The notes below the pieces were generated by a model. The model did not search any database, was not told where the DNA came from, and saw only the letters and a program-made list of their open reading frames with translations. Made by a program: the position numbers and the translations under genes. Of a stretch of 64,000 nucleotides of DNA, positions 1,325 through 62,564 are shown one piece after another. The stretch spans positions 124,001 to 188,000 of IMG/VR virus record IMGVR_UViG_3300042889_001503; one strand, given 5' to 3'. The first letter of the stretch is position 1. Every line of letters begins with the position of its first letter.

Positions 1325-1332
1325 TATTTATT
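1325..1332 (+). promoter_or_regulatory. TATTTAT upstream motif (putative phage late promoter)
   Basis: TATTTATT 13 nt before the ATG at 1346; same motif recurs before many structural or leader-bearing genes. Confidence 0.55.
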
Positions 1333-1345
1333 AAAAAAGATAAAA

Positions 1346-4300
1346 ATGTCAAAATCTTATAGAATAAGAACAAAGGTCGGTGTTGACACTTCAGTTAAAG
1401 TATTAATTGACCAAGAGTTCGAACATTTAGAAATATTATCCTTAAAAATATTACAAACAGACATCTATACTAGACAATGTGCTGATTATGGTGTTATTGT
1501 TGGACGTGTTAGTGTTAATAATGGATTTGGTGTTCCAAATGCCAAAGTATCTATCTTCATACCTTTAGATAGTAAAGACCAAGCTGACCCAATTATTTCT
1601 GAGTTATATCCGTATAAATCATTGTTAGATAATAATGATGATGGTTATAGATATAATTTACTACCCTATAAACCATCATATAGTGCTCACGTTCCTACCG
1701 GGACATTTTTCACTAGAACGGATGTTTTAACTAACCCAACTTTAATTGAAGTTTACGACAAGTATTATAAATATAATGCGGTTACAAACGATAGTGGTGA
1801 TTATATGATTTTTGGGGTTCCTGTTGGTGCTCATCTAATTGTTTTAGATGTTGATTTGTCTGACATTGGAGAATTTTCATTATCACCTCAAGATTTGATT
1901 AGAATGGGTCTTGCAACAGAAGCTCAAGTATCCGGAACAAATTTTAAATCATCAAATAATTTAAGAGAATTACCACAAATTGTATCGGTAAATAGAAGTA
2001 TTGAGGTTGAACCATTATGGGGACAACCTGAAATTTGTAATTTAGGTATAACAAGAACAGATTTTGATTTAAGTAGTGAGGCGAATGTTGATATTCGACC
2101 AACATCTATTTTTATGGGTTCTATAATTTCTGACTCAGATACTAACGCATTAAAGTCTAATTGTAAACCAACTAACAGGTCGGGGTATCAATGTAGTTTA
2201 ACTACGGGTCCCGGTGAAATATTGGCGATTAGACAAACAATACAACAAGATTCTAACGGGTTACCTATTCTTGAAAATTTTAGTTTAGAGGGGGGTGGTA
2301 AAGTTATTGATGAAAACGGAACTTGGTTGGTAGATGTCCCAATGAATATGGATTACTATGTAACCAATGAGTTTGGAGAACAAGTTCTTTCAAATGACCC
2401 TGAGGTTGGTATCCCAACTAAAGCAAAATATAGATTTAAAGTAAAATGGTCTCAATCACCATCATTATCAGACCTTACTAAAAGAGCTTATTTTTTAGTA
2501 CCAAATATTAGAGAATATAGTTCCAATCAATTTGAATCGTATGCTTTTAGCGTTGATTGGAATGATTATGGAAATACTCAAATGATTCAAGACGCTATAA
2601 ATTGTGATGATAAGTTTTACATAATGCAGTATAATAAAGTTTATACTGTATCAGAATTTATATATAATCATAGAGGGGGTAGCGGAAGTGAAAGGTATGT
2701 CGGTATTAAAAATATCTTAGAGGAATCTTGTGAAACTGAAAATAATAAATTTCCAACAAATGATGGTAATTTTAGGTTTGACATACTATACATAATTTTT
2801 ATGTTTTTCAGTATAATACTTACACCGGTATTCTTTGCGTTAATATTGGTGATGCACATTTTATATTTTGTTGTGTGGTTATTAAGGCTTATAGTTATAC
2901 CTGGATTAATTGTTTGGTGTGCTATTAGTATTATTAACTACGGGATATTGATTCTTGGTTGTGTTCCATATGCTTTAGGGATGATTGCGGGGTATTTGGC
3001 TATGATAGTTATATATATAATATTAGGACTTCTTTTGGCGTATATTTTAAGGCTGTTATGGAAACTTGACTTAAAAGGGATAAAAGTTCCTATATTAACA
3101 TATCCGGATTGTGACCTTTGTTCTTGTGAACAAGGACAAAGTGTTAATGAAAACCCTGACCCGGATGGTAATGATGAGGATGAAGAAAATGAATTAGTAC
3201 CGTGTCCAACAATATCGTCAGACCCTAAACCAATATCACCATTAAATGCTGGTTTAATAAGTGTTCCATTATCTACCTTTGCAACGTTTAAATTACCATC
3301 CTTTAATGCTGAGACAAATCCAAATGGGTTTCCGGGTCAAAGAAAAGTTATTTTTGCTAATGATTTTGCGGGGTATCAATTTGATAATCAATATGGGTCA
3401 TCCACTATTGGAGCACCTTACTTACAAAGTGAGGTTATTGCTGTGGGTGAAGGGGGTGATAGTACATCTTTTGCGTATGATTGGTTTACTAACGCATTAC
3501 CAATGGCGGATAGAATTAACTTATTTAATGTTAAAGCGAAATATTTTAATAGTGGTACAACTAATCCGGGAGGTGGTGTTAATAGAATTAATGTTACTTT
3601 TGACGAAGCACGTAATCCGGGTAAATTTCATAAAGATAATACTATTGTAATATTATGTGATAAATCAACTGCTAGAAGATTAGTTGCGGGAGAAATGTTG
3701 GCTTTTCAAAATCCGACTTTTAGTAAAGACCCAAATTTAACGGGAGGTATTAAAAATATATTTAATAACAACGCAATTACAGGAACAACATATACAGGTG
3801 ATACAACGGTGACAGTTAATTACGCACATCCTAACGGTATTAGTAGTATGTTATCAACTACTTATGATGTTAGAGTATTTGATGATGCTGGTCCATATAG
3901 TGCAAAAACAACTACAAATACCCATAAATTCCCTATTGATATAGAATATTTCCAAGTTATTACTGCTATGACATACAGTAATTTTAGTGGTCAATGTGTA
4001 AATACTTTACCTAATTCATTAAATAAAAAATACTTCAGAAATGAGTCGACTTTGTTTCAATTGTTCTCAACTATTAATGGAGGAAGACGGGATTGGACGG
4101 GTACTATTTTTAACCCAAATTGTTATTATCGACCTAATGGTAACACACATCCAGACCCAATACCTTTTGGAGTTCAAAAGTATGATTCGATGAATTATGT
4201 TAGAAACCGTAATGAAAACGTTGTTGTGATATTAAATAGAGGTGTTGACCCATATACCAGTAAAATACCAATTAAATATGGTATTGGTAAACTTTTTGGA

Positions 4301-21536: not shown

Positions 21537-21544
21537 TATAAATA
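21537..21544 (-). promoter_or_regulatory. TATTTATA motif
   Basis: 4 nt upstream of the ATG at 21532 (minus strand). Confidence 0.55.
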
Positions 21545-25803: not shown

Positions 25804-25811
25804 TATAAATA
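25804..25811 (-). promoter_or_regulatory. TATTTATA motif
   Basis: 19 nt upstream of the ATG at 25784. Confidence 0.55.
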
Positions 25812-25876: not shown

Positions 25877-25884
25877 TATTTATA
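25877..25884 (+). promoter_or_regulatory. TATTTATA motif
   Basis: 3 nt upstream of the ATG at 25888. Confidence 0.55.
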
Positions 25885-26716: not shown

Positions 26717-26724
26717 TATAAATA
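26717..26724 (-). promoter_or_regulatory. TATTTATA motif (within palindrome TATTTATAAATA)
   Basis: 11 nt upstream of the ATG at 26705. Confidence 0.5.
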
Positions 26725-30856: not shown

Positions 30857-30887
30857 TTTGATAATAATAATTTTATTCGTATCTTTG
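30857..30887 (+). promoter_or_regulatory. Bacteroidota-type sigma70 promoter (-33 TTTG / -7 TAnnTTTG)
   Basis: TTTG-19 nt-TATCTTTG, 4 nt before the primase ATG. Confidence 0.8.
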
Positions 30888-39041: not shown

Positions 39042-39072
39042 TTTGGGAAACATAATTTTATTATTATCTTTG
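39042..39072 (+). promoter_or_regulatory. Bacteroidota-type sigma70 promoter
   Basis: TTTG-19 nt-TATCTTTG upstream of 39104 and the sigma gene. Confidence 0.8.
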
Positions 39073-39674: not shown

Positions 39675-40475
39675 ATGAAAGAAAAGAGCTCAGGTATTCC
39701 AATTAATCAAGAAGAAATAAACCTGTATTTAAAGGACATCCGTAAAATTAAGGTAATGACACCGGAAAGAGAGAAAGAATTATCTAAGATGATTACATCC
39801 GGTACTTTATCCCCAAGGGAGATTGATGAGGTAAACCAAGAACTATTGGAAGGTAACTTACGTTTTGTTATTACCGTGGCAAAACAATATCAAAATCAAG
39901 GATTAGACTTTCCTGACTTAATTGCTGAGGGTAATTTAGGATTAATGAAAGCCATCCAAAATTTTGATTGGTCTAAGAACCTTAGATTTATATCTTACGC
40001 GGTATGGTGGGTTAAACAATCAATCCTTCAGTCATTAAATGATAATGCGAGAACCATCCGACTACCTGTTAATGTGGTTCAGGATTTACATAGAGCCAAG
40101 AAAGCGATTGAATCCAACGGTGGTAAGTTGGAGGACAAGTTTCAAAATCTACCATCAATGGTTTGGTTAGATATGAGTATTAATGAAGATGGGGACACTC
40201 TTGTTGATATTGTTAGAAACGACCAAGCAGATATGCCTGACGAAGTTTTTGATACCAAGGATGAATTAAAAAGACAATTACATTCACTGTTGAATGTTTT
40301 GGATGATAGAGAAAAAGTTATTGTGGGAGACTATTATGGGCTTACCGGGACACCAAGAACTCTTGAAGACATTGGTGGTGACTTTAACCTAACAAAAGAA
40401 CGTGTTAGACAAATTAAAGAGAAAGCCTTACGGAAATTAAGGAATGATAGTTCAATATTATACGATTATATGTAA
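39675..40475 (+). CDS. RNA polymerase sigma70 factor, RpoD-like, Bacteroidota short type lacking region 1.1
   Basis: YLKDI (1.2), NLRFVITVAKQY, DLIAEGNLGL, RFISYAVWWVKQSI, RTIRLPVN, TLEDIG...LTKERVRQIKEKALRKLR. Confidence 0.92.
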   Translation: MKEKSSGIPINQEEINLYLKDIRKIKVMTPEREKELSKMITSGTLSPREIDEVNQELLEGNLRFVITVAKQYQNQGLDFPDLIAEGNLGLMKAIQNFDWSKNLRFISYAVWWVKQSILQSLNDNARTIRLPVNVVQDLHRAKKAIESNGGKLEDKFQNLPSMVWLDMSINEDGDTLVDIVRNDQADMPDEVFDTKDELKRQLHSLLNVLDDREKVIVGDYYGLTGTPRTLEDIGGDFNLTKERVRQIKEKALRKLRNDSSILYDYM

Positions 40476-40484: not shown

Positions 40485-40516
40485 AACCTTCTATTTATTA
40501 TGATAGAAGGTTTTTT
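40485..40516 (+). terminator. Intrinsic terminator after the sigma gene, overlapping a TATTTATT motif
   Basis: AACCTTCTAT-ttattatg-ATAGAAGGTT-TTTT. Confidence 0.75.
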
Positions 40517-43173: not shown

Positions 43174-43516
43174 TGATACAACAAGAGTTAAGTTAAAACC
43201 ATCGACAGCTAGACTAGCGATAAAAGATATTGTTAGAGGTGAAGGTTGTGAATTAGAGTTAAAATTAACTCAAGAAAAAGTTATAAAGTTAGAATCTAGA
43301 GAATCTCAAAAGGATACTATCATTTCTTTATTAGAATCCAAAGATAAGAATAATCAATTTATTATTAGTCAACAAGGATTACAGGTTGATGAATTTAGAA
43401 ATATGACTAATGATTTGAAAAAAGAAATAAAACAAATGAGGGTTAAAACTTTTTTATACAAAGTGGGAACATTTGTTGGTATATTAACAACTTCGTATTT
43501 ATTAATTGTAAGATAA
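43076..43516 (+). CDS. Putative exported spanin-like protein (signal peptide, coiled coil, C-terminal TM)
   Basis: MRKLITLIIFLTVSLSCFSQ; C-terminal VGTFVGILTTSYLLIVR; 98-nt overlap with the upstream gene. Confidence 0.5.
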   Translation: MRKLITLIIFLTVSLSCFSQTNTNNQPQNQVISDTTRVKLKPSTARLAIKDIVRGEGCELELKLTQEKVIKLESRESQKDTIISLLESKDKNNQFIISQQGLQVDEFRNMTNDLKKEIKQMRVKTFLYKVGTFVGILTTSYLLIVR

Positions 43517-44543: not shown

Positions 44544-44551
44544 TATTTATA
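44544..44551 (+). promoter_or_regulatory. TATTTATA motif
   Basis: 13 nt upstream of the ATG at 44565. Confidence 0.6.
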
Positions 44552-44564
44552 ATAAAAACTAAAA

Positions 44565-46837: not shown

Positions 46838-46839
46838 TT

Positions 46840-48238: not shown

Positions 48239-48276
48239 AATAAATAATTTAACTTTAAATATAGTAGAAGTAAAGA

Positions 48277-49197: not shown

Positions 49198-49218
49198 CCC
49201 CTATAAAGGGGTTTTTTT
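49196..49218. terminator. Intrinsic terminator between converging genes
   Basis: AACCCCT-ataa-AGGGGTT-TTTTT. Confidence 0.8.
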
Positions 49219-49432
49219 ATGGGATATATTGAAGTAATTCTTGGATTATTTTTATTGTTCCGTATATCGCGGAGAACAATATGTAAAATGATGCTGATAA
49301 CATAATCCACTGCCCTTTAGTTAAACCTCTTTGTTTACAGGTTTTACATTCCTCTTCAGGTTGTTCAGGTTGTTCAGGTGTAACATCTATGATGTCTCTT
49401 TCTTCAATAATTTGTCCTTCAACTGTTTCCAT
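49217..49432 (-). CDS. Small membrane protein with CxxC
   Basis: ECKTCK followed by a TM helix. Confidence 0.6.
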   Translation of the reverse strand: METVEGQIIEERDIIDVTPEQPEQPEEECKTCKQRGLTKGQWIMLSASFYILFSAIYGTIKIIQELLQYIP

Positions 49433-49531
49433 AGTAATAATATTAATTTAAAACAAATATAGTAAAAATTTTTTAAAAGAGAAACTTGCTTTTTCACTTT
49501 TTATTTCTTATACTTTAAAAAAAGAAAAATT

Positions 49532-50380: not shown

Positions 50381-50411
50381 TTTGGATAATTAAAAATATG
50401 TCTTATCTTTG
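50381..50411 (+). promoter_or_regulatory. Bacteroidota-type sigma70 promoter
   Basis: TTTG-19 nt-TATCTTTG. Confidence 0.75.
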
Positions 50412-50462
50412 TCCCGTTGAATAAAGAAAATAACGTTTGTTAGATTATTTACAAAAAACAAA

Positions 50463-50470
50463 TATTTATA
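50463..50470 (+). promoter_or_regulatory. TATTTATA motif
   Basis: 14 nt upstream of the ATG at 50485. Confidence 0.6.
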
Positions 50471-50484
50471 ATAAAAACAATTAA

Positions 50485-51882
50485 ATGAAGATTATCCAAG
50501 TACTTTCAAATTTAATAACTGAAGACGCTCGTTTTCAGGTATTTTATAATAAATATATACTACCTAGTGGTGATAGAAAAAAAGGATTACTTCCTTTTGA
50601 AATTGTTAAGCAAATAGTTTTTGCTGACCCAACAACAAGAGTTCCGGTTAACTATGACAAAAATGGTGCGTCCGTTGAAGATATGTTAAGTAATCAAATT
50701 AAGGTTGGGAAATATAGTCAATGGATGTTAAATATGTTTATTAAACCACATTTAACTAATGACAATAATGATGTTATAGAAGTTAATACTGACGAATATA
50801 AATCAAAGGCAAATCAATATAGAAAACTTTTTTTAGAAGATTTACATTACTTTACTGAATTACTAACAAAATTTGAAAGATTCAAAGGTAGTTTAGTAGA
50901 TGCGTCTAAGAAAGATATTAATAATGTTAAATCTATTAACGAATTATCTCAATTACAAGTTGAGTATGGTGATACAACAGTTGATTTGGCTGTGTATCGT
51001 GGTAAAAAAGTTAAAAACGAAAAAGGTGCTGACGTTAAAACAAACTTTAATTTTCCCGGTGCGGAAATATTAAAGGTTGGTTCAGAATATACCTTGATTA
51101 GAATTTCTGATAAAGGTGACTTAGGTTCTAAGGCGGCTTCTTATTTTGGAGGTTACGAAGGAGGATTAGCAAGAGGTGAGTCTAATTGGTGTACGGCAGC
51201 AACAGGTTCTGACCACTCACATAGATATAGACAAAAAGGTCCATTATATATTATTATGGCTAATGACGATAAAGGTAAAGTAGGTGAGGTAACAGGATTA
51301 CCTACAGAAAGATATCAACTTCACTTTCCAGCACCGAGTCAATTTAAATCTCGTGACCAATATTCTGCTGAGGGTAATGTCCCAATTGTTGAATTTTTAA
51401 ATGGTAAATGGAGTGAATTTAAAGAAATATTGAAACCTGAATTTGCTAAAGGGTTTGTTACACCAAATAGTGAAAACGTTAACATTAGATATCCATCTGA
51501 TGAAACAGGTAGATTTGTTGCGTTATATGGGTTTGAAGAATTATTTGAGGCGTTACCGGACACGATTAAAAAATTAAATATTGTTAACACTTCAAATGAA
51601 AACATTAGTGTAGCACTTCCTAAGTCAATTGTTAGGTTTAAATCGTTAGTGGCGGTGATGTTTCAGAATATGATTAGTTCAATTCCTGATAACATCTGTG
51701 AGTTGAAGAACTTGACGTTATTGGCTTTCCCTGATAATAAAGAATTAAAATCAGTTCCGGATTGTATACTGTCATTAAAAAACTTTACATTTTTAAATGT
51801 AAACGGATGTCCTAATGTTCAAGTACCAAAAGAATTGGAAAAATATAATGAAGGTAATGGTTATTACCATATGGAAGAATAG
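50485..51882 (+). CDS. LRR-containing protein, paralogue 1
   Basis: LITED leader; WCTA motif; C-terminal LP..I..L..L LRRs. Confidence 0.75.
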   Translation: MKIIQVLSNLITEDARFQVFYNKYILPSGDRKKGLLPFEIVKQIVFADPTTRVPVNYDKNGASVEDMLSNQIKVGKYSQWMLNMFIKPHLTNDNNDVIEVNTDEYKSKANQYRKLFLEDLHYFTELLTKFERFKGSLVDASKKDINNVKSINELSQLQVEYGDTTVDLAVYRGKKVKNEKGADVKTNFNFPGAEILKVGSEYTLIRISDKGDLGSKAASYFGGYEGGLARGESNWCTAATGSDHSHRYRQKGPLYIIMANDDKGKVGEVTGLPTERYQLHFPAPSQFKSRDQYSAEGNVPIVEFLNGKWSEFKEILKPEFAKGFVTPNSENVNIRYPSDETGRFVALYGFEELFEALPDTIKKLNIVNTSNENISVALPKSIVRFKSLVAVMFQNMISSIPDNICELKNLTLLAFPDNKELKSVPDCILSLKNFTFLNVNGCPNVQVPKELEKYNEGNGYYHMEE

Positions 51883-51892
51883 ATAAAGAAAA

Positions 51893-51900
51893 TATTTATA
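51893..51900 (+). promoter_or_regulatory. TATTTATA motif
   Basis: 17 nt upstream of the ATG at 51918; leader region duplicated with the gene. Confidence 0.6.
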
Positions 51901-51917
51901 ACAAAAAAACAATTAAA

Positions 51918-53309
51918 ATGAAGATTACAAAAGTATTATCGAACTTAGTTACTGAAGACGCTCGTTTTCAAATTTTATACAAAAAATATGTGTTACCTAG
52001 TGGTGATAGAAAAAAAGGTTTACTACCATTTGAGGTTGTTAAACAAATTGTTTTCGCTGACCCAACAACGAGAGTTCCTGAGAACTACGATAAGGAAGGT
52101 GCGTCTATTGAGGATATGACAAGTGACAAAATTAAAGTTGGTAAATATACCCAATGGTTGTTGAATCTATTTGTTAAACCATACATAACTAGAGAAGGTT
52201 CTAATGAACCAATTGAGGTTGGGACTGATGAGTATAAATCAAAGGCGACTGAATACAGACGACTTTTCTTAGAAGATTTATCTCAATTCACTGAATTATT
52301 AGTGAAATATGATAGATTTAAAGGTAGTTTAGAGGATGCCGCTAAAAAAGACATTAACAATGTTAAATCACTTAATGATTTATCTCACTTGAAAGTTAAA
52401 GTGGGTGATGAAACGGTTGATTTAAATATGTATCGTGGTAAAAAAATTAAGAAAGAAGAAGGTGTTGCTGCTAACACAAACTTTAATATTCCCGGAGCTG
52501 AAATTTTAAAAGTTGGTTCTGAATACACACTAATTAAAATTGCTGACAAAGGTGCTTTAGGTTCTAAAGCGGCATCTTATTTCGGTGGTTATAGTGGAGG
52601 ACTTGATAGAGGTGAAACTAACTGGTGTACGGCAGCAGAAAATTCAAGTTATTCAAACACTTACAGACAACAAGGTCCATTATATATCTTTATTGCTAAT
52701 GATGATAAAGGTAAGGTTGGTCAAGTTACGGGGTTACCATCAGAAAGATATCAATTCCACTTCCCATCTAACCAATTTAAATTTGCTAACCAACACGGTG
52801 GTAACATTCCGGTTGTTGAGTATTTGAATGGTAAATGGTCTGAGTTTAAAGAAATATTCAAACCTGAGTTTGCGGCTGGATTTGTTAAACCAAATTCTGA
52901 TAATGTTGAAATTAAATACCCGGACTCTGCTACAGGTAAGTTCGTGGCTTTATACGGATTTGATGAATTATTTACATCATTACCTATAACAATTAAAAGA
53001 TTGAACATTATTAACACTTCAACAGAAAGTGTTACAATTGATGTTCCTGAGTCAATCAGTAGATTCCAATCATTAACAGCAATATTGTTTGAGAATATGA
53101 TTAGTAAACTTCCAAACTCAATCTGTGAATTAAAGAACTTGGTGTTTATCGCTGTTCCGGGTAACAAAGAATTGAAAACAATTCCGGAATGTATTATGAA
53201 TTTACCAAACCTTACATTTGTGAATGTAAGTAGATGTCCTAATGTTCAAGTGCCAAAAGCGTTAGAACAATACAATACGGGTGAAGGTTTCTACCATATG
53301 GAAGAATAA
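51918..53309 (+). CDS. LRR-containing protein, paralogue 2
   Basis: End-to-end similar to 50485-51882. Confidence 0.75.
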   Translation: MKITKVLSNLVTEDARFQILYKKYVLPSGDRKKGLLPFEVVKQIVFADPTTRVPENYDKEGASIEDMTSDKIKVGKYTQWLLNLFVKPYITREGSNEPIEVGTDEYKSKATEYRRLFLEDLSQFTELLVKYDRFKGSLEDAAKKDINNVKSLNDLSHLKVKVGDETVDLNMYRGKKIKKEEGVAANTNFNIPGAEILKVGSEYTLIKIADKGALGSKAASYFGGYSGGLDRGETNWCTAAENSSYSNTYRQQGPLYIFIANDDKGKVGQVTGLPSERYQFHFPSNQFKFANQHGGNIPVVEYLNGKWSEFKEIFKPEFAAGFVKPNSDNVEIKYPDSATGKFVALYGFDELFTSLPITIKRLNIINTSTESVTIDVPESISRFQSLTAILFENMISKLPNSICELKNLVFIAVPGNKELKTIPECIMNLPNLTFVNVSRCPNVQVPKALEQYNTGEGFYHMEE

Positions 53310-53327
53310 TTTAAAAAAAATACTACT

Positions 53328-53618
53328 ATGAAAAATGTTGACGTTGAAATCTACATTAATCAATTTATAACTTTCTTTAATAACAACCCCAATGACTTAC
53401 TTGAGTTAATTGGGGATGTTTTGAAGGACGACTTCTACGACAGAGTTAAACAACAATCTTTGGATAATGTTAATAACGGTGAGGATGTTTCCTTAACCCA
53501 AAAACAAATTATATCTATTGTTGTGGCTCTTAAACAATCTCAAAATGATGAGGTTGATATGGATAAGATTAAGTCCATAATTTATCACACACAATTCGGA
53601 CATTTTTCCCTTAATTAA
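53328..53618 (+). CDS. Hypothetical protein
   Basis: ORF track. Confidence 0.6.
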   Translation: MKNVDVEIYINQFITFFNNNPNDLLELIGDVLKDDFYDRVKQQSLDNVNNGEDVSLTQKQIISIVVALKQSQNDEVDMDKIKSIIYHTQFGHFSLN

Positions 53619-53650
53619 TTTGTATATTCAAATTTAATATCTTACTTTTG
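53619..53650 (+). promoter_or_regulatory. Bacteroidota-type sigma70 promoter
   Basis: TTTG-20 nt-TACTTTTG upstream of ATG 53669. Confidence 0.75.
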
Positions 53651-53668
53651 TGGTTCAAAATAAACCTG

Positions 53669-55429
53669 ATGAAAGAAGAATTATTTAATTATACCGTAAA
53701 GAAATATCAAGTATCGGAATACTTGGATACCAATCCTATTCGACCTCTTAAAAAAGAGGTTCAGGATGATTTTTGGGGGGTAATTGAAACTACTATGAGT
53801 TCAACTAAAAACTCAAGTTATACGCCTTGGGGTGACTTTACTTTTAAGGAGGATTATGATACAGAAGAAAAATTTGTAGAACATTACGGGAACCCACTTA
53901 CTTCATTATATTTGAATAGGGTGATTATCTGTGTGACTAAAGAGAATGATAAAGTTTCCTTTAAGATATTCAATTACAGTAAAACAAGACGTGTTGCGGG
54001 TAAATGGTTTAAATTAAGAACTAATTGTAGGTTCATTACTTTTAACTATAAAACAAATGCGTTATATACCGGTTCATTAGATAATTACCATTTGAAGAGA
54101 AAATGTCGTAAAAATATTAGAAGAGTCCTTTTTAATAATGACCCTATCAATAATATGAGACGATATTTGAGAGAGTCATTCAACTCAATAGTTGATAAAG
54201 ATAAAGTTGATATCCCAACAATAGTTAATCAGGTTATCTCAACCTTTGTTAACGCCATTCCCGGAACTGAACTATACTCTGATTTACTTCCTGAACAAAG
54301 AATCTATAAAAGATATTTGGACGTTCAAGGAATTAAAGTCCCAAACAATTGGTTTGAGCTTATGAATGTTTATCCCCAACCAAAGAAGAAAGATTTGGTG
54401 AAGTGTGAGTATAAGTATATTGATGCTCTAATGAGGGTTCATAATTTAAAGGGGGATAAAGTTAAAAGGGTATTACATAACGTTAAATCATTTGAGGGTG
54501 TAAATAATTTAACCAATGCTTGTTCAATATTTGGAGATAAGTTTATTTTAAATCAACCGGACGAGTTTGTTCAATTGTTACTGGAGAAGTCTCAACCCGG
54601 ATTTCATAATAATATTGGAAAAGGATTGTTAACCAAAAAAGAATTCTCTAATTTCTTTGAAATATATAAATTATTTCAAAAAGGATTAGTTAATAATAAT
54701 GTGATTGAAGACCACTTTAGATTTTATCGTTTATTGGACGAAATGGAACCGGTTAAATGGACTTCAAGGACTCACGATGAGTTTGTTCAAGAACATTATG
54801 ATTGGTCGGAAAAATATAACCATTACACAAACGGAGATTTCAATAGAATTTACAACCGAGGGTTTGTAGATAAAATAAATGAGGTTATCTTAACCAAAGA
54901 TGGTCCATATTTCCCGGAGGTGTTAACAACATCCAAACGATATAACAACGAGTCGTTCTTCCAAAACAATTGTGTTAAGACATATGTTAAACGTGTGGGT
55001 TCTGTGTTGATATCACTAAGACGTGGTGAGGGAGAAACTGAAGAAAGAGCGTCAATTGAAATTGAAGTAACTCCGCTTGTGTGGCTGGATGAAATGTATT
55101 TTAATTTAAGACGAGTTCAAACCTTGGGAAAACGTAACAGTAGGTTAGATAATAGTTGGGATGATGTTTTGGGTAAATTAGATGATAGAATTGAATATAT
55201 TGTTCGTGAGAAATTGTTTGATACATTACAGATTGATGGTGAATTTGGGGGGAGAAAAGTGTTTTCTGATTATAAAATTGGGGAATATAGTAGAGACAAT
55301 TATGGTACTTTTCCAAATATAACAAAAGGGGTTCAATTAGAATGGGAAAACGATTCAATTATGAAATTAAATTCGTATAATTATAACATTGTTCCCGTCT
55401 TTAATGACCCGGACGCATTAGATTTTTAA
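53669..55429 (+). CDS. PcfJ-like domain protein
   Basis: C-terminal 'HYDW...ESFFQNNCVKTY...RASIEI...QTLGKRN' pattern. Confidence 0.65.
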   Translation: MKEELFNYTVKKYQVSEYLDTNPIRPLKKEVQDDFWGVIETTMSSTKNSSYTPWGDFTFKEDYDTEEKFVEHYGNPLTSLYLNRVIICVTKENDKVSFKIFNYSKTRRVAGKWFKLRTNCRFITFNYKTNALYTGSLDNYHLKRKCRKNIRRVLFNNDPINNMRRYLRESFNSIVDKDKVDIPTIVNQVISTFVNAIPGTELYSDLLPEQRIYKRYLDVQGIKVPNNWFELMNVYPQPKKKDLVKCEYKYIDALMRVHNLKGDKVKRVLHNVKSFEGVNNLTNACSIFGDKFILNQPDEFVQLLLEKSQPGFHNNIGKGLLTKKEFSNFFEIYKLFQKGLVNNNVIEDHFRFYRLLDEMEPVKWTSRTHDEFVQEHYDWSEKYNHYTNGDFNRIYNRGFVDKINEVILTKDGPYFPEVLTTSKRYNNESFFQNNCVKTYVKRVGSVLISLRRGEGETEERASIEIEVTPLVWLDEMYFNLRRVQTLGKRNSRLDNSWDDVLGKLDDRIEYIVREKLFDTLQIDGEFGGRKVFSDYKIGEYSRDNYGTFPNITKGVQLEWENDSIMKLNSYNYNIVPVFNDPDALDF

Positions 55430-55430
55430 A

Positions 55431-55754
55431 ATGAAAGAAATACCTCAAAATTGTATAGATACGTTTAAATCTAGGTTCTTAACACAACCAAGTATTATTG
55501 AAGTGTATCCAAACCTGTCTAATGAAGACACGGACAAATTATTAAATAAATCACTTTTATTATGGTTTGATTATTTTGTAAATAACGAACACGACATAGT
55601 TTATAAAGATAGATTATACGAATATGATGCTACGGGAATTTTAATTTTACGGAAGTCACAAACTAAGATATTTATTTTAACAAGAGTGGATAAACAAAAC
55701 GTAGTAGAGTATTTGTTACTACAACTAAAACGATTAACAACAAAAAAAGATTAA
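55431..55754 (+). CDS. Hypothetical protein
   Basis: ORF in operon. Confidence 0.6.
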   Translation: MKEIPQNCIDTFKSRFLTQPSIIEVYPNLSNEDTDKLLNKSLLLWFDYFVNNEHDIVYKDRLYEYDATGILILRKSQTKIFILTRVDKQNVVEYLLLQLKRLTTKKD

Positions 55755-55756
55755 GA

Positions 55757-56080
55757 ATGGAAATTACACAAGAATTATTACAGGAAAAAATTAACAATGG
55801 TGAAAAATTAGTGGTTGACTTTTGGGCTCCGTGGTGTGGACCTTGTAAAGTTATGAAACCCGCATTTGAAAAAGTTTCCGAACATTACAGAAATGAAAAT
55901 TCGGAAGTTCAGTTATTCACATTGAATGTTGAGGAAAACAAAGAATTTGCGGCTAAATTAGGTATTAGAGCAATCCCAACAGTTAAAACATTTTCTGAAG
56001 GTAAAGAAGTTTATTCTCAACCGGGAATGCAAATGGAAGGACAAATTAAACAATTGGTGACTAACCTAATCAATGGATAA
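55757..56080 (+). CDS. trxA: Thioredoxin
   Basis: VDFWAPWCGPCK, GIRAIPT. Confidence 0.92.
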   Translation: MEITQELLQEKINNGEKLVVDFWAPWCGPCKVMKPAFEKVSEHYRNENSEVQLFTLNVEENKEFAAKLGIRAIPTVKTFSEGKEVYSQPGMQMEGQIKQLVTNLING

Positions 56081-56360
56081 GTTACTAATTCTTTTCACAA
56101 TGGAAGGTTGTCCTTATTGTGATATGATGAAGGAACAACTAACGAAATCAAATATCCCATTTGAGGTTAGAGATATCGATGAACACAATGATGAATATGA
56201 GATGTTTGTTGAGATTACGGAAAATGAATTTGTTCCCGCATTTATGATTGTTGAATCACCTCTAACAGATAACCACAAGAGTTATCTGTTTGCTCCGGAA
56301 AGAGATTACAACGAGATTGAAGAAGGTGTTGCAATCATTAAAGAACATTTTGGAAAATAA
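56073..56360 (+). CDS. Glutaredoxin-like protein
   Basis: GCPYC, FVPAF cis-Pro loop. Confidence 0.85.
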   Translation: MDKLLILFTMEGCPYCDMMKEQLTKSNIPFEVRDIDEHNDEYEMFVEITENEFVPAFMIVESPLTDNHKSYLFAPERDYNEIEEGVAIIKEHFGK

Positions 56361-56389
56361 AGAATCCCCTTGATTGGGGGTTTTTTATT
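56358..56389 (+). terminator. Intrinsic terminator
   Basis: AATCCCC-ttgatt-GGGGGTT-TTTT. Confidence 0.8.
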
Positions 56390-56396
56390 TATGGGA

Positions 56397-56404
56397 TATT
56401 TATT
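56397..56404 (+). promoter_or_regulatory. TATTTATT motif
   Basis: 3 nt upstream of the ATG at 56408. Confidence 0.55.
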
Positions 56405-56407
56405 ATT

Positions 56408-56839
56408 ATGAAAATAGTAATTAAAGAATCTCAGTATAACTTTTTGGTTGAACAAACTACACCATCAACAACACCGGTTCCATTAAGTAGAGAAGAACAA
56501 ATTAAGTTAAATAAAGAAAAACTTGAACTTAAAAAGAAAGCTGCTGAGGAATTAAAACTTAAAACCATTCAAAAAAAGGATTCAATTGCAAAGGCTTGGG
56601 ATGAAAAAAGAGCTCCTGAATTAAAGAAAGCTGAAGAATTACATAAAAAATATCTTGATGCTTGGTTAGCTGCTAATCCGGGTAAAACGGAAAAAGATTA
56701 TAGTAAGTATTTGGAGAAACAAAAAAAATTACCTGATTCACCATCCTATGAAACTCAAGACCCATCATTCAAATCAACAAAATGTGGTGTTTCAAAAGCG
56801 GCGGCAAAACAATCTAAAAGTGATTGGTCTAAAAAATAA
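56408..56839 (+). CDS. Lys-rich protein with IKESQ..LVEQ leader
   Basis: MKIVIKESQYNFLVEQ; self-contained between terminators. Confidence 0.65.
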   Translation: MKIVIKESQYNFLVEQTTPSTTPVPLSREEQIKLNKEKLELKKKAAEELKLKTIQKKDSIAKAWDEKRAPELKKAEELHKKYLDAWLAANPGKTEKDYSKYLEKQKKLPDSPSYETQDPSFKSTKCGVSKAAAKQSKSDWSKK

Positions 56840-56866
56840 AAAATCCCCAAGTTAGGGGATTTTATT
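56838..56866. terminator. Bidirectional intrinsic terminator
   Basis: AAAATCCCC-aagtta-GGGGATTTT between converging genes. Confidence 0.85.
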
Positions 56867-56867
56867 T

Positions 56868-57686
56868 TTAAAATAATATTAGGTCTTTAATTTTATCTCT
56901 AATTAACCAAGGTTTATTATCAAATGGTTTTGTTATGTCTTCCATAATATCATAATCTTTTATCATATCATTGAATACCAACATATCAAAATCAAACACG
57001 TCCAATGTCATTGAGATAATATCTTTTTTAGGAAACACCGTGTTAGCATTAATGTCTATTTGATTATCGTCGTCCACTTTAATGGACGAATATTTGAAAG
57101 TTAACTTATCTGTTAACAGAACATCTAATAACTGATTAGAGATGTATTCTGAGTAGTATAACTCTTGTCTTCCCATACCTAAACTATATCCGTGTGGAAA
57201 CTCTGATGAGATATTCAACGGAGCATAAGTATAATATTCCAAATTGGTAGTGTCGTCTTCAGAATAATCTAATTCATATTCCAATCTTCTATTATAAAAA
57301 ACTGAATTAAATTTAGGTTGAGGATTTTCAACAATATCTAAAATAAGATTACGGTGATATAACGGTCTTGATGAATGATAAAAATCAAACGTGTATTCTG
57401 TTTTTTTAGTTAAGTCTCGATTATACATAATTAAATCAATAATGTTAACCGTCTCATAACCAAATTTAGTCATTAAAGATTTATAGGTTTCAACAAATGA
57501 CTCTCTTACTTTAATTATATCTAAAATTTTATCTGATGTTGTCATACCGTTAACAACAAAGAATTTACCACAATCAGTAACTTCAATTACGGAGTCATAA
57601 TTAATTGTTTTATTTATCTCTTTTATTAAAAAGTCTGCGAATAGGTTTACTATACCCCGGTTTGAATTTTCATTAATATATTTCAT
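56868..57686 (-). CDS. Degenerate S-adenosylmethionine synthetase (MetK)-like protein
   Basis: By-eye colinearity with the MetK N-terminal and C-terminal domains; catalytic motifs lost (see findings). Confidence 0.6.
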   Translation of the reverse strand: MKYINENSNRGIVNLFADFLIKEINKTINYDSVIEVTDCGKFFVVNGMTTSDKILDIIKVRESFVETYKSLMTKFGYETVNIIDLIMYNRDLTKKTEYTFDFYHSSRPLYHRNLILDIVENPQPKFNSVFYNRRLEYELDYSEDDTTNLEYYTYAPLNISSEFPHGYSLGMGRQELYYSEYISNQLLDVLLTDKLTFKYSSIKVDDDNQIDINANTVFPKKDIISMTLDVFDFDMLVFNDMIKDYDIMEDITKPFDNKPWLIRDKIKDLILF

Positions 57687-57734
57687 ATTTTTAAGTTATA
57701 CGAAATGATATAGAAATTAATTCTAATTATAAAT

Positions 57735-57760
57735 AAAAAAAGGGAACTAAATTGTCCCCT
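57735..57760 (-). terminator. Intrinsic terminator for the 57940 gene
   Basis: Minus strand AGGGGAC-aatttag-TTCCCT-TTTTTT (imperfect stem). Confidence 0.6.
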
Positions 57761-57790
57761 GTAATTTTTTTCACCCCTAACGTTTAGTTA

Positions 57791-57940
57791 CTACCTCTTG
57801 TAATATTTCTCAACAACTTTACGAATTGATTCTTGGATAGGTTGAGTCTGTGGTTGACTTTGACCCGCAGGAGTATTCGTTTGTTGAGCTGGTGGTGGTG
57901 GAGGAGTTTGATTTCCTTGGTTTTTACATCCGCATCCCAT
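57791..57940 (-). CDS. Small MGCGCK protein (49 aa)
   Basis: ATG 57940 in the 57991 ORF; P/Q-rich linker; TATTTATG at 57970-57977 upstream. Confidence 0.6.
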   Translation of the reverse strand: MGCGCKNQGNQTPPPPPAQQTNTPAGQSQPQTQPIQESIRKVVEKYYKR

Positions 57941-58022
57941 GATAATATATGTATTAAAGTTTATATATCCATAAATATCAATAATAATCATAATAAGTAA
58001 ATAAATTTTGTATCTTCGTGGA

Positions 58023-58030
58023 TATTTATT
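58023..58030 (+). promoter_or_regulatory. TATTTATT motif
   Basis: 3 nt upstream of the ATG at 58034. Confidence 0.55.
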
Positions 58031-58033
58031 ACT

Positions 58034-59401
58034 ATGGGTAGAAAATTAAGACTTACAGAATCCGAATTATATAAAGTAATCAAAAAAATAGTTGAGCAAA
58101 CTGAGGACGAATATTATAGAATATCTCCTGAGGATTACTTGGATATGATGCAATATGCCAGTTATAATGGTAATGTGTTTAGAAAAATGAAAAAATATGG
58201 TGGAAAACCATTATATATTACAGGTGATTTAGATTTAAGCGGTTTACCGGTTAAAGACATTGGACCAATAGGTTATGTTGACGGTAGATTTGATATTAGC
58301 AGAACTAAAGTATCCGATATTGGTAATTTAAGAAGTAAGTCACATATTTGGGATTCGGGGTCTCCTCGAGAAAGAATTAGAGAAAAACAAGAACTTTTGG
58401 GTAAACAAGCTGAGATGGACTCCAAACGAGAAGATGATGAATGGAATTTTCAAAATCACGATGAAGAGGGATTAAAGGCTATGGCTTTATTAGAATATCT
58501 TGAGGGTCAAGGTAAAGTTAAAGTATTGGATAATGATGAGAAAGAAGAGTTAAAAGAATTGACTCAACAATTGGAAGAACTTAATGCCGATTATGATGAT
58601 GAAGATAGAGACGGTGACCCGGATGAGAATGTGGAAATATTAAATAAAATTGAAGAAGTTCAAGAAAGAATTGATGATTTAACTGGTGACGTTGGTGACA
58701 TCTATGATATGTATCCAACAAATTATACTCATTATGGTTTGACTCAATTTGAAGTTTTGGTGGATGGTTTTAAAGGTGAAGAATATACTGTTGGAACTGA
58801 GGAAGAAATGGATAGAGCGGCTTTAGAGTATTCTAAAAATTATATTGATGATGTTGGAGCTGATGGGTTTAGTAAAAGTTTTATTGAGGATTATTTGGAT
58901 GAAGATGCAATTGTTGACTTTGCAAGAGAAGATTATGAATATCAAGTAAGAGATAGTCCGGAAAGTTATTTTAATGATGATGATTTTGAATTGACTTCAG
59001 AACAAGAAGAAAGAATAGAACAGATTGAATCTCAAATTGAGGATTTGGAACAACAAAAACTTGAATTAGATTCAGATGATGAAAATTATTATGACTACGA
59101 AGAGGATTTAGATAATCAGATTGAATCTCTTCAAGAAGAGTTAGACAATATTGAGGTTGATACTGACCCAACTGAGGATATGATTGATAATAAAGTTGAA
59201 GAATTAGTTAGGTGGGTTAAACGAGACCCTATGCAATATCTTAATGATTACGGTATGGACGTTAAAGAATATATTGATGGAGATGCTTTAGCTCAAGGGT
59301 TAGTTGATTCTGATGGGTGGGGTATTATGAACAGTTATGACGGTACTTATGACAGTATTGATATAGGTGGTGAGTCTTATTACGTAATGAGAGTTAACTA
59401 A
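58034..59401 (+). CDS. Highly acidic protein with LTESEL leader, short LRR-like segment and acidic coiled coils
   Basis: MGRKLRLTESELYKVIKKIVEQ; GDLDLSG..VDGRFDISRT; D/E-rich C-terminal two-thirds. Confidence 0.7.
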   Translation: MGRKLRLTESELYKVIKKIVEQTEDEYYRISPEDYLDMMQYASYNGNVFRKMKKYGGKPLYITGDLDLSGLPVKDIGPIGYVDGRFDISRTKVSDIGNLRSKSHIWDSGSPRERIREKQELLGKQAEMDSKREDDEWNFQNHDEEGLKAMALLEYLEGQGKVKVLDNDEKEELKELTQQLEELNADYDDEDRDGDPDENVEILNKIEEVQERIDDLTGDVGDIYDMYPTNYTHYGLTQFEVLVDGFKGEEYTVGTEEEMDRAALEYSKNYIDDVGADGFSKSFIEDYLDEDAIVDFAREDYEYQVRDSPESYFNDDDFELTSEQEERIEQIESQIEDLEQQKLELDSDDENYYDYEEDLDNQIESLQEELDNIEVDTDPTEDMIDNKVEELVRWVKRDPMQYLNDYGMDVKEYIDGDALAQGLVDSDGWGIMNSYDGTYDSIDIGGESYYVMRVN

Positions 59402-61672: not shown

Positions 61673-62533
61673 ATGATAGAAACAGGAAAGATAATTAATG
61701 GAGATTGTATTGAGGTAATGAAAACATTTCCTGAAGGTTCAATTGATTTACTAGTAACATCACCACCATATAATGTAAACATTTCGTATGATGTTCATAA
61801 GGATGATTTACCAATGGAGGAATATTACGAGTGGTCAAAGGATTGGTTGAGAGAGGCGTTCCGAGTATTAAAAGATGATGGTCGAATTGCTGTGAATGTC
61901 CCAAATGAATTGAATGTCCAAGAAAGAGGTGGGAGAATATTATTCGTTGCCGAGTTTTGGATGTTAATGAAAGAAGTTGGGTTTAAATTTAGTGGGTTAG
62001 TCGACCTTACGGAAGATAGTCCACATAGAGTTCGACAAACGGCTTGGGGTTCTTGGATGAGTGCGTCAGCACCTTATATCTATAATCCTAAAGAGTGTAT
62101 CATATTGGCTTATAAGAAAAGTAGTAAAAAATTAACTAAAGGAGTTTCACAATGGATGGGAATATCAACTGAGGTTACTACTGAAGATGGTAAGGTTAAA
62201 AACAAAATGATTTATCAGGACGAAGATAAAAAAGAATTTATGAATTTGGTGTTTGGTAGATGGGAATATTTTGCGGATACTAGGTCATTAACTAAAGCCA
62301 CATTCTCAATGGACATTCCATCAAAGGCGATTAAGATATTGTCTTATAAAAATGATATTGTTCTTGACCCTTTTATGGGAAGTGGGACTTCAGCTTTTGC
62401 GGCTGAGTTATTAGATAGACGATGGATTGGAATTGAGTTATCTCCGGATTATACAGAAATTGCAAGGAAAAGAGTTCAATCATTAATTGATGAACGAAAA
62501 CAAACAAAATTAGAATTAAAAGAAGAGGTGTAA
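61673..62533 (+). CDS. Site-specific DNA methyltransferase, N4/N6 family beta class (SPPY suggests m4C)
   Basis: GDC, VTSPPYN, VLDPFMGSGT, IGIEL. Confidence 0.9.
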   Translation: MIETGKIINGDCIEVMKTFPEGSIDLLVTSPPYNVNISYDVHKDDLPMEEYYEWSKDWLREAFRVLKDDGRIAVNVPNELNVQERGGRILFVAEFWMLMKEVGFKFSGLVDLTEDSPHRVRQTAWGSWMSASAPYIYNPKECIILAYKKSSKKLTKGVSQWMGISTEVTTEDGKVKNKMIYQDEDKKEFMNLVFGRWEYFADTRSLTKATFSMDIPSKAIKILSYKNDIVLDPFMGSGTSAFAAELLDRRWIGIELSPDYTEIARKRVQSLIDERKQTKLELKEEV

Positions 62534-62549
62534 TAACCTCTTTTTTATT
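62523..62549 (+). terminator. Intrinsic terminator
   Basis: AAGAGGT-gtaata-ACCTCTT-TTTT. Confidence 0.75.
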
Positions 62550-62556
62550 TTCTGTA

Positions 62557-62564
62557 TATTTATA
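62557..62564 (+). promoter_or_regulatory. TATTTATA motif
   Basis: 15 nt upstream of the ATG at 62580. Confidence 0.6.

What the first reader, a model, noticed from the sequence alone, without database searches (positions are those of the whole stretch)
1325..62564. Two promoter classes: host-type TAnnTTTG versus a phage-specific TATTTAT motif
Seen: TATTTAT[A/T/G] lies 3-30 nt upstream of the starts at 1346, 21532(-), 25784(-), 25888, 26705(-), 30804(-), 40523, 44565, 50485, 51918, 56408, 57940(-), 58034 and 62580. These are all structural, lysis-like or leader-bearing genes. TTTG-N19/20-TAnnTTTG precedes the primase operon, the sigma operon, 50485 and the PcfJ-like gene. TATTTATA is the reverse complement of the T4 late promoter TATAAATA, so it is not gp55-type in this orientation, but it aligns with the Bacteroidota -7 box (TA-nn-TTTG vs TA-TT-TATA). 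Spacings of only 3-4 nt to ATG imply nearly leaderless mRNAs. Inference: a late regulon read by a phage sigma factor. Caveat: the intergenic DNA is very AT-rich.
Basis: partly seen in the sequence, partly recalled or inferred. Interest (0 to 1): 0.65.

Follow-up and report, generated by a model that had tools for sequence, protein, structure and literature searches.

The report
Phage-specific TATTTAT promoters beside host-type
An uncultured freshwater jumbo phage of Bacteroidota has two real promoter types, the host's own and a phage-specific TATTTAT box. The TATTTAT box sits so close to many start codons that the mRNAs probably have no leader or a very short one. It looks like a variant of the phage T4 late promoter, probably read by a second, gp55-like sigma factor encoded outside the window.

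Summary
TATTTAT is not enriched in the window as a whole. In the 272-kb genome it is the top over-represented word upstream of genes: 84 sense against 17 expected and 34 antisense. Between co-directional genes it is 61 sense against 13 antisense, and it is nearly absent between convergent genes. Its spacing to ATG is sharp: exactly 4 nt for 20 genes and 14-18 nt for 29. It stays invariant upstream of orthologues whose proteins have fallen to 30-40% identity.

The second-ranked word is the Bacteroidota -7 box, TATCTTTG. It has TTG 18-20 nt upstream, which TATTTAT promoters lack.

The interpretation needs correcting. The window's sigma (39675-40475) copies the DNA-reading helices of Bacteroidota sigma-A, so it should read host-type promoters. 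A second, divergent sigma (genome 43791-44540) resembles the T4 gp55 late-sigma family. TATTTATA matches the T4 late box TATAAATA at 6 of 8 positions in the same orientation and likewise has no -35 element.

The regulon is not purely late or structural. No transcription start sites were mapped, and which sigma reads which box remains inference.

The parts
1325..1331 (+). TATTTAT box, 14 nt before the ATG at 1346 (1884-aa protein downstream of baseplate genes). Short-leader class.
21538..21544 (-). TATTTAT box, 5 nt before the ATG at 21532 (807 aa). Near-leaderless class.
25805..25811 (-). TATTTAT box, 20 nt before the ATG at 25784 (220 aa, SprB repeat).
25877..25883 (+). TATTTAT box, 4 nt before the ATG at 25888 (60-aa ORF; it is uncertain whether this is a gene).
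26718..26724 (-). TATTTAT box, 12 nt before the ATG at 26705 (212 aa).
30857..30887 (+). Host-type promoter TTTG-N19-TATCTTTG. The box ends 4 nt before the primase ATG at 30892, so a leaderless mRNA is predicted.
39042..39072 (+). Host-type promoter TTTG-N19-TATCTTTG of the operon 39104-40475 that holds sigma-1. Its -33 element lies in the hairpin 39021-39057.
39675..40475 (+). Sigma-1: a 266-aa sigma-70 family protein with regions 1.2, 2 and 4. It is 42% identical to a Bacteroidota sigma-A and shares that protein's recognition helices.
40485..40512 (+). Intrinsic terminator hairpin after the sigma gene.
43496..43502 (+). TATTTAT box 15 nt before the ATG at 43518, inside the end of the preceding gene.
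44544..44550 (+). TATTTAT box, 14 nt before the ATG at 44565 (438 aa). ATATTTATA is invariant in orthologues down to 30% protein identity.
50381..50411 (+). Host-type promoter TTTG-N19-TATCTTTG, 73 nt upstream of 50485 and in tandem with the TATTTAT box.
50463..50469 (+). TATTTAT box, 15 nt before the ATG at 50485 (465 aa). Conserved in orthologues down to 32% identity.
51893..51899 (+). TATTTAT box, 18 nt before the ATG at 51918 (463-aa paralogue). The predicted start is 51904, and one metatranscriptome contig begins at 51905.
53619..53650 (+). Host-type promoter TTTG-N20-TACTTTTG, 18 nt before the ATG at 53669. The TTG start at 53648 would lie inside the box.
56386..56403 (+). Two TATTTAT boxes, 15 and 4 nt before the ATG at 56408, directly after the terminator 56366-56380. 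Only the 4-nt box is kept in the one distant orthologue found.
58023..58029 (+). TATTTAT box, 4 nt before the ATG at 58034 (455 aa). The arrangement TATTTAT-N3-T-ATG is kept in orthologues down to 41% identity.
62557..62563 (+). TATTTAT box, 16 nt before the ATG at 62580 (118 aa, peptidoglycan-binding domain), after a terminator. Conserved in relatives.

Best explanation
TATTTAT(A) is the -10-like core of a promoter specific to this phage clade, and it has no -35 element. Transcription is inferred to start at the A five bases after the box. Two kinds of mRNA follow. Where the box sits 4 nt before ATG (form TATTTAT-NNN-T-ATG) the mRNA is leaderless. Where it sits 14-18 nt before ATG the mRNA has an A-rich leader of 10-14 nt.

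The host core RNA polymerase would read the box with a phage-encoded sigma factor. The most likely one is the divergent, gp55-family-like 249-aa sigma-2, at genome 43791-44540 on the minus strand, outside the window. On this reading TATTTATA is a variant of the T4-type late promoter TATAAATA.

The second class, TTTG-N19/20-TAnnTTTG, is the ordinary Bacteroidota sigma-A promoter. It would be read by host sigma-A at the start of infection, and probably also by the phage's own sigma-A copy (sigma-1, window 39675-40475).

Shown: the motifs, their strand and position bias, their conservation, and the sigma homologies. Inferred: the start sites, the timing, and which sigma reads which box.
For: Motif reality:
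- TATTTAT is the top de novo 7-mer upstream of genes: 84 sense, 17 expected, 34 antisense.
- Its strand and location pattern is that of a promoter, and it far exceeds a Markov-2 background.
- Spacing peaks lie at 4 nt and at 14-18 nt, with almost nothing at 7-11 nt.
- An A stands at box+11 in both classes, at 82% and 91%. In the 4-nt class this A is the A of ATG and is preceded by T in 85%.
- Many boxes directly follow terminator hairpins.
- Footprints: the box and its spacing are invariant upstream of orthologues of 44565, 50485/51918, 58034 and 62580, while the flanks and the proteins diverge to 30-41% identity.
- The same word is top-ranked in a second clade whose sigma-2 is only about 38% identical: ATATTTAT 61 against 6.2 expected, 3 antisense.

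Geometry: host-type boxes have the same 4-nt class, seen in 7 genes. Published Flavobacterium promoters place TAnnTTTG at -12..-5 with the start 4-5 nt after it (PMC6847099; PMC9723704).

No -35 element: TTG at 18-20 nt upstream occurs in 15 of 34 host-type promoters but only 3 of 28 and 4 of 34 TATTTAT promoters.

Sigmas:
- No phage RNA polymerase was found with Pfam models.
- Sigma-1 shares the Bacteroidota sigma-A helices of regions 2.3-2.4 and 4.2.
- Sigma-2 matches the phrog_234 'late sigma transcription factor' family at E 4.5e-4, and 19 of 68 family members match it.
- A profile of the sigma-2 family hits SigA region 2 at E 0.002 and T4 gp55 at E 0.07 in the PDB.
- The sigma-2 model has mean pLDDT 90, and its top Foldseek hits are almost all sigma factors.
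- The ESM Atlas names its nearest clusters viral sigma factors.
- Sigma-2 is 88-98% conserved across the listed metagenome homologues, of about 8000 hits.

T4 precedent: the late box TATAAATA lies at -13..-6, has no -35, and shifts in phages whose gp55 has diverged (PMC1524935).

Targets: portal, tail sheath, baseplate wedge, an adaptor-like protein, the 1884-aa protein after the baseplate genes, and a peptidoglycan-binding protein all carry the box. Primase, the sigma-1 operon and an FtsH-like protease carry the host type.
Against: - No 5' ends were mapped. The RNA runs are assembled contigs only. One contig begins 1 nt from the predicted start at 51904, but another crosses that promoter.
- The sigma-2 to gp55 link is weak. 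E-values are 1e-4 to 0.07, Foldseek E-values are above 0.001, and phrog_234 also matches in 8 of 14 cellular control genomes. Sigma-2 also seems to have a C-terminal helical domain that gp55 lacks.
- No gp45 C-terminal domain was found, and gp33 was not sought.
- The long operon that holds sigma-2 is itself headed by a TATTTAT box (genome 61176-61182). An additional promoter is therefore needed to start it. A host-like TTG-N20-TATATTTT sits before genome 57189, but it lacks the G and its conservation was not tested.
- If the start is the A of ATG, the box lies at -11..-5, two bases closer than in T4.
- TATTTAT also heads non-late genes.
- Complete related genomes carry both sigmas, so co-occurrence cannot tell which reads the box.
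Confidence: 0.55

Rival explanations
1. One reading: the RpoD-like sigma-1 in the window (39675-40475), made early from a host-type promoter, reads TATTTAT. Sigma-2 would then be a product of that regulon and would read something else.
For: Sigma-1 sits under a host-type promoter, as expected for the first step of a cascade. The operon that contains sigma-2 begins with a TATTTAT box, which fits an order of sigma-1 first and sigma-2 second. Sigma-1 differs from Bacteroidota sigma-A in region 1.2, at the positions of E. coli Y425 and K426, and has a shortened region 3. These changes could alter how the downstream half of the box is read. A phage copy of sigma-A with unchanged specificity would seem redundant.
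Against: Its helices in regions 2.3-2.4 and 4.2 are almost identical to those of Bacteroidota sigma-A. Yet TATTTAT lacks the near-invariant T-7 and G-5 of the host box (PMC6847099) and has no -33 TTG for the intact region 4.2 to bind. No further abundant motif was found for sigma-2 to read.
Confidence: 0.25
2. Host sigma-A reads both classes, and TATTTAT is merely a weak or variant -7 box. It might need a phage activator or appropriator in the manner of T4 MotA/AsiA.
For: Both boxes begin with TA followed by T-rich sequence, and both show the same 4-nt spacing to ATG.
Against: The six positions that are nearly invariant in host promoters include T-7 and G-5, which TATTTAT lacks (PMC6847099). 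The -33 element is absent. The box is invariant in its own right across distant phage clades, which argues for a dedicated reader.
Confidence: 0.08
3. The word is not a promoter. It could be a by-product of AT-rich intergenic DNA or of terminator tails, or a translation-initiation element in the 5' UTR.
For: Intergenic DNA has only 25% G+C. Some copies are terminator parts, for example 40492 and probably 57729(-). Bacteroidota lack Shine-Dalgarno sites and use A-rich leaders (PMC6847099).
Against: The excess over a Markov-2 model of the same DNA is about 13 standard deviations. There is a strong strand bias, and the word is nearly absent between convergent genes. Two discrete spacings with an empty gap between them do not fit one ribosome-binding geometry. 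The word is exactly conserved while its flanks vary.
Confidence: 0.05
4. An unrecognised phage-encoded RNA polymerase reads TATTTAT.
For: Several giant proteins (1021-2307 aa) have no family match, and jumbo-phage polymerases can be very divergent (PMC7598289).
Against: There were no matches to Rpb1, Rpb2 or T7-type models. The T7 model matched in no control genome, so that search says little. The phage has T4-like head, sheath and baseplate genes and two sigmas, the pattern of jumbo phages that use the host polymerase (PMC7824862).
Confidence: 0.05

Closest known systems
T4-type late promoters (TATAAATA at -13..-6, read by gp55 with gp33 and the gp45 clamp)
   Same: Both are 8-bp AT-rich -10-like boxes without a -35 element. 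The two boxes are identical at 6 of 8 positions in the same orientation. Both precede head, tail and baseplate genes, and the genome encodes a distant relative of the gp55 family. The T4 consensus is known to drift where gp55 has diverged, for example CTAAATA in phage Aeh1 (PMC1524935).
   Different: The two central bases are TT, not AA. The box is inferred to lie about 2 nt closer to the start. About a quarter of the promoters would give leaderless mRNAs. The box also heads non-late genes. Sigma-2 is longer than gp55 (249 against 185 aa) and has an extra C-terminal helical domain. No gp45 C-terminal domain was found, and gp33 was not sought.
Bacteroidota sigma-A promoters (-33 TTTG, -7 TAnnTTTG)
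   Same: The window's second class matches the box, the 19-20 nt spacer and the TTG. The phage sigma-1 is a homologue of the sigma that reads them and also lacks region 1.1.
   Different: A high share of these phage promoters place the box exactly 4 nt before ATG (7 of about 34). Only 5.5% of Flavobacterium mRNAs are leaderless (PMC9723704). TATTTAT itself does not meet this family's invariant positions.
Phage sigma cascades (Bacillus phage SPO1 gp28, then gp33/34; group 2 jumbo phages with RpoD-like and minimal sigmas, PMC7824862)
   Same: Host polymerase is re-aimed by phage sigmas. The genome holds one RpoD-like and one divergent sigma. The first phage sigma is under a host-type promoter.
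   Different: Here the RpoD-like copy appears to keep the host's specificity. The order of use is not known. The SPO1 comparison rests on general knowledge and was not tested here.

Membership tests
T4-type late promoter | Consensus TATAAATA on the non-template strand | tested here: not met
   The consensus here is (A)TATTTAT(A), identical at 6 of 8 positions. The two central bases differ (PMC1524935).
T4-type late promoter | No -35 element | tested here: met
   TTG at 18-20 nt upstream occurs in 3 of 28 and 4 of 34 TATTTAT promoters, at background level, against 15 of 34 host-type promoters. No conserved column was found upstream beyond a T at -15.
T4-type late promoter | Box at -13..-6 relative to a mapped start | not testable with these tools
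   Only assembled RNA contigs were available. The spacing to ATG suggests -11..-4.
T4-type late promoter | A gp55-family sigma is encoded by the phage | tested here: inconclusive
   Sigma-2 matches phrog_234 at E 4.5e-4, with 19 of 68 relatives matching; a family profile hits T4 gp55 in the PDB at E 0.07; the fold resembles sigma factors. But phrog_234 also matches cellular control genomes.
T4-type late promoter | Co-activator gp33 and sliding clamp gp45 | tested here: inconclusive
   The Pfam gp45 C-terminal model gave no match in the genome. gp33 was not sought. Divergent homologues cannot be excluded.
T4-type late promoter | Found upstream of late (virion, lysis) genes only | tested here: not met
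   The box precedes portal, sheath, baseplate, adaptor-like and peptidoglycan-binding genes. It also precedes a DnaB-like helicase gene and many small genes at 188-272 kb.
Bacteroidota sigma-A promoter (host-type class) | TAnnTTTG box with no G at the two n positions | tested here: met
   TATCTTTG occurs 19 times against 0.5 expected, and 37 genes carry TAHHTTTG.
Bacteroidota sigma-A promoter (host-type class) | TTTG/TTG about 19-20 nt upstream (-33) | tested here: met
   Present in 15 of 34 promoters, against 1-2 of 34 at control spacings. There are four full sites in the window.
Bacteroidota sigma-A promoter (applied to TATTTAT) | Near-invariant T-8, T-7, T-6 and G-5 | tested here: not met
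   TATTTAT(A) has A where T-7 would stand and no G (PMC6847099).
Bacteroidota primary sigma (sigma-A type), applied to sigma-1 | Regions 1.2, 2 and 4 present, no region 1.1, phylum-typical recognition helices | tested here: met
   Pfam regions r1_2, r2 and r4 all match. The protein is 266 aa and 42% identical to a 288-aa sigma of a Bacteroidota MAG, with the same 2.3-2.4 and 4.2 helices. Region 3 is shortened. The comparison rests on one MAG protein.
Leaderless mRNA | The 5' end of the transcript lies at the A of the start codon | not testable with these tools
   This is inferred from the exact 4-nt spacing in both promoter classes and from the published 4-5 nt distance from box to start (PMC6847099).

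The most novel reading that the evidence does not exclude
A widespread, uncultured clade of freshwater jumbo phages of Bacteroidota runs a conserved programme with two phage sigmas. One is a copy of the host's unusual sigma-A. The other is a two-domain relative of T4 gp55 that has shifted the late box to TATTTATA. About a quarter of the phage's promoters, of both classes, would fire exactly at the A of ATG. The phage would then rely on leaderless translation far more than its host does.
Probability: 0.35. Interest if true: 0.6.

Novelty: new variant of a known kind. Interest (0 to 1): 0.5.

Why it matters
Transcription signals of Bacteroidota phages are almost unknown, and no cultured phage in the collection searched carries either sigma at more than 39% identity. 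The TATTTAT box gives three practical things:
- A simple, conserved marker for finding gene starts and operon boundaries in hundreds of related metagenomic contigs.
- A testable pairing of promoter and sigma in a phylum whose transcription machinery differs from the E. coli model.
- A natural set of probable leaderless mRNAs in a phylum that lacks Shine-Dalgarno sites.

It also extends the known drift of the T4 late promoter together with its sigma.

Tried and rejected
- A whole-window enrichment test gave 44 against 54.5 expected. It was rejected as the wrong background, because coding DNA swamps the signal.
- Near-identity DNA search of phage records found nothing.
- I first read the conserved R584/E585/R588/Q589-type residues of sigma-1 as a sign that it reads a canonical TTGACA -35 element. 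I therefore treated TTGACA-N17-TAnnnT as a third class read by sigma-1 (6 non-coding sites, all sense; conserved before the SSB gene). I withdrew this. Bacteroidota sigma-A has the same residues, and TTG-N20-TA is the host geometry. These sites are better seen as host-like promoters with a strong -35 and a weak -7 box.
- Co-occurrence could not separate the two sigmas, because complete related genomes have both. Three more scans with distant sigma-2 relatives found no loci. The family alignment was too diverse to scan with.
- Cultured phages have no useful sigma-2 homologue; the only hit is 25% identical.
- RNA: only three freshwater metatranscriptome runs hold parts of the stretch, all as assembled contigs. 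They show presence, not transcript ends. DNA carry-over cannot be excluded.
- The FtsH-like gene was tried as a host marker. Its best matches are contigs of Bacteroidota MAGs at 55-59% identity, which may themselves be phage contigs. It was used only to reach a Bacteroidota genome.
- The 'PcfJ-like' label for the 593-aa protein was not confirmed by Pfam or PHROGs.
- The host-type match before 59450 (TATATTTG) loses its G in close relatives and is not counted.

Full report
**Setting**

The window is bases 124001-188000 of a 272,437-bp IMG/VR virus record with 32% G+C, estimated 91% complete. I laid the whole record in the script box and called 333 genes with a simple longest-ORF rule.

PHROGs places T4-like virion and replication genes across the record:
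- large terminase, portal, major head protein, tail sheath and baseplate wedge proteins
- family-B-like DNA polymerase, an SSB, a UvsX-like recombinase and a DnaB-like helicase
- primase and SbcCD-like proteins

No RNA polymerase subunit was found with Pfam models. The T7-type model matched in no control genome either, so that search is uninformative. No phage record in the collection is close at the DNA level. About 80 related contigs per query, many from genomes of 200-320 kb, came from environmental metagenomes. Three freshwater metatranscriptome runs hold parts of the window.

- It is 14 times denser outside genes than inside (6.9 against 0.5 per kb).
- Ranked against a second-order Markov model built from the upstream non-coding DNA itself, it is the most over-represented 7-mer: 84 sense, 17 expected, 34 antisense.
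- Sorting intergenic regions by the orientation of their flanking genes gives the pattern expected of a promoter. Co-directional regions have 61 sense and 13 antisense copies. Convergent regions have 0.4 per kb on either strand. Divergent regions have about 5 per kb on both strands. Simulation expects 12.8 +/- 3.7.
- The window alone gives 13 sense against 2 antisense.
- The distance to the start codon is sharply bimodal. Twenty genes have exactly 4 nt and 29 have 14-18 nt. There is almost nothing at 7-11 nt, and antisense copies show no peak.

The second word to emerge de novo is TATCTTTG(T), 19 copies against 0.5 expected. This is the Bacteroidota -7 box. So both classes are real and were recovered without prior assumption.

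Three of the 14 listed sites are weak.
- The copy at 40492 lies in the stem and loop of the terminator after the sigma gene.
- 57940(-) depends on choosing an internal ATG as the start, and so does 30804(-).

**Anatomy of the TATTTAT promoter**

Aligned on the box, the two spacing classes share an A at the fifth base after it, at 82% and 91%. In the 4-nt class this A is the A of ATG, preceded by T in 85% of cases, so the form is TATTTAT-NNN-T-ATG. In the other class it opens a run of A.

The host-type box has its own class with exactly 4 nt to ATG, seen in 7 genes including primase. In Flavobacterium the box occupies -12..-5 and transcription starts 4-5 nt after it (PMC6847099). The simplest reading is a common start five bases after either box. 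That gives leaderless mRNAs, or leaders of 10-14 nt. The empty range at 7-11 nt reflects the fact that very short leaders serve neither mode of translation initiation; this last point is inference.

Host Flavobacterium has only 5.5% leaderless mRNAs (PMC9723704). Here about a quarter of predicted promoters are of that kind.

Many boxes follow a terminator hairpin directly. Host-type promoters carry TTG 18-20 nt upstream in 15 of 34 cases. TATTTAT promoters do so in 3 of 28 and 4 of 34, which is background. They are therefore promoters without a -35 element.

**Conservation**

The box and its distance to ATG are invariant upstream of orthologues of 44565, of the paralogue pair 50485/51918, of 58034 and of 62580. 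Meanwhile the flanking bases change and the proteins drop to 30-41% identity. One lineage has a degenerate box before its 51918 orthologue.

In 80 loci around the sigma gene, sense copies peak at 13-18 nt and antisense copies do not. In a separate clade reached through a sigma-2 relative of 38% identity, ATATTTAT is again the top upstream word: 61 against 6.2 expected, with 3 antisense.

**Who reads it?**

The genome has two sigma-like genes and no others.

Sigma-1 (window 39675-40475) has regions 1.2, 2 and 4 and scores best against RpoD/RpoS models. Through a Bacteroidota MAG I obtained a 288-aa sigma that lacks region 1.1, the hallmark of the phylum's primary sigma (PMC6847099). Sigma-1 is 42% identical to it. 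It shares the helices of regions 2.3-2.4 and 4.2 almost letter for letter, including the substitutions that set this phylum apart from E. coli. That predicts host-type specificity. It sits badly with a box that lacks T-7, G-5 and the -33 element.

Sigma-2 (genome 43791-44540, minus strand, 249 aa) was left open by Pfam and NCBIfam, with only weak region 2 matches. I therefore used the large representative search once and built a 68-member alignment. The results were:
- The profile hits SigA region 2 at E 0.002 and T4 gp55 at E 0.07 in the PDB.
- The AlphaFold model is confident (mean pLDDT 90).
- Almost all its top Foldseek hits are sigma factors, although E-values are weak. Isolated sigma-E region 2 aligns with a TM-score of about 0.7.
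- The ESM Atlas calls its neighbouring clusters viral sigma factors.
- Its only recurrent PHROG is phrog_234, 'late sigma transcription factor', matched by 19 of 68 members.

The T4 late promoter TATAAATA lies at -13..-6, has no -35 element, and is known to change where gp55 has diverged (PMC1524935). Read in the same direction, it is also identical at six of eight positions. I therefore think sigma-2 is the more likely reader.

The case is not closed.
- The homology is distant, and phrog_234 also matches cellular genomes.
- No gp45 C-terminal domain was found.
- The operon that holds sigma-2 starts with a TATTTAT box.
- Complete relatives carry both sigmas.

**Which genes?**

TATTTAT precedes:
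- portal, tail sheath, baseplate wedge and an adaptor-like gene
- the large operon from 1346
- a peptidoglycan-binding protein
- a DnaB-like helicase and many small genes in the 188-272 kb region

The host type precedes primase with its exonuclease and SbcCD genes, the sigma-1 operon, an FtsH-like protease and many small genes. Leaderless TATTTAT promoters concentrate in the 188-272 kb region and short-leader ones in the 1-188 kb region. This may mark two temporal sub-classes.

'Late regulon' is therefore only partly right. TATTTAT is the phage's main promoter type, found before 83 genes against 37 for the host type.

**RNA**

The three runs are assembled contigs at low depth. They cover 51905-56343 in pieces. 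One contig begins at 51905, one base after the predicted start, and another crosses that promoter. This shows only that the sequence, or a close relative's, is present in RNA libraries.

**Verdict**

The finding is real and well conserved. The mechanism is a variant of a known kind, a T4-like late promoter with a phage sigma, in a poorly known host phylum, with an unusual reliance on leaderless starts.

Noticed in passing
genome 113617-113645 (outside the window; L089:13617-13645): A canonical-looking TTGACA-N17-TATACT promoter stands before the SSB gene. Both hexamers and the 17-nt spacing are kept in relatives while the spacer sequence varies. Five similar non-coding sites exist, all in sense orientation. 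It is probably a host-like promoter with a strong -35 and a weak -7 box.
   Followed up: partly
genome about 114555-114600 (outside the window), upstream of the UvsX-like gene: A conserved hairpin lies between the SSB and UvsX-like genes, with compensatory changes in relatives (for example GGACAC/GTGTCC to GGGCAC/GTGCTC). A conserved TAGACATATG stands at the start codon. It could be a terminator, an attenuator or an operator.
   Followed up: no
genome 43791-44540, minus strand (outside the window; L003:7791-8540): A second, highly conserved sigma-like gene (249 aa) lies in a long operon with PhoH-like, sugar epimerase, aminotransferase and glycosyltransferase genes.
   Followed up: yes
window 41359-41465: An 18-nt unit is repeated 5.9 times (97% matches) inside the 253-aa gene 40816-41577. 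It encodes a six-residue tandem repeat.
   Followed up: no
window 39021-39057: A 15-bp hairpin at the end of the SbcC-like gene contains the -33 TTTG of the sigma-operon promoter, so terminator and promoter overlap.
   Followed up: no
window 50485-53309: Two adjacent paralogues (465 and 463 aa, with weak leucine-rich-repeat matches at the C-terminus) each have their own TATTTAT promoter. The first also has a host-type promoter 73 nt upstream.
   Followed up: partly
window 25122-25784 (-), 48277-49197, 49532-50380, 61673-62533, 62580-62936: Gene content: a protein with an SprB repeat (a domain of Bacteroidota gliding adhesins), a full DnaJ homologue, two DNA methyltransferases and a small protein with a peptidoglycan-binding domain.
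   Followed up: no
window 53648 and 53669: The longest ORF of the 593-aa protein starts at a TTG inside the host-type -7 box. The ATG at 53669, 18 nt after the box, is the more likely start.
   Followed up: partly
window 49196-49213 and 56840-56863: Hairpins with T-runs on both strands lie between convergent genes. They are probably bidirectional terminators. Terminator-like sites are enriched in 39000-58999 (24 against 6.6 expected), whereas E. coli-type promoter matches are not (112 against 104).
   Followed up: no
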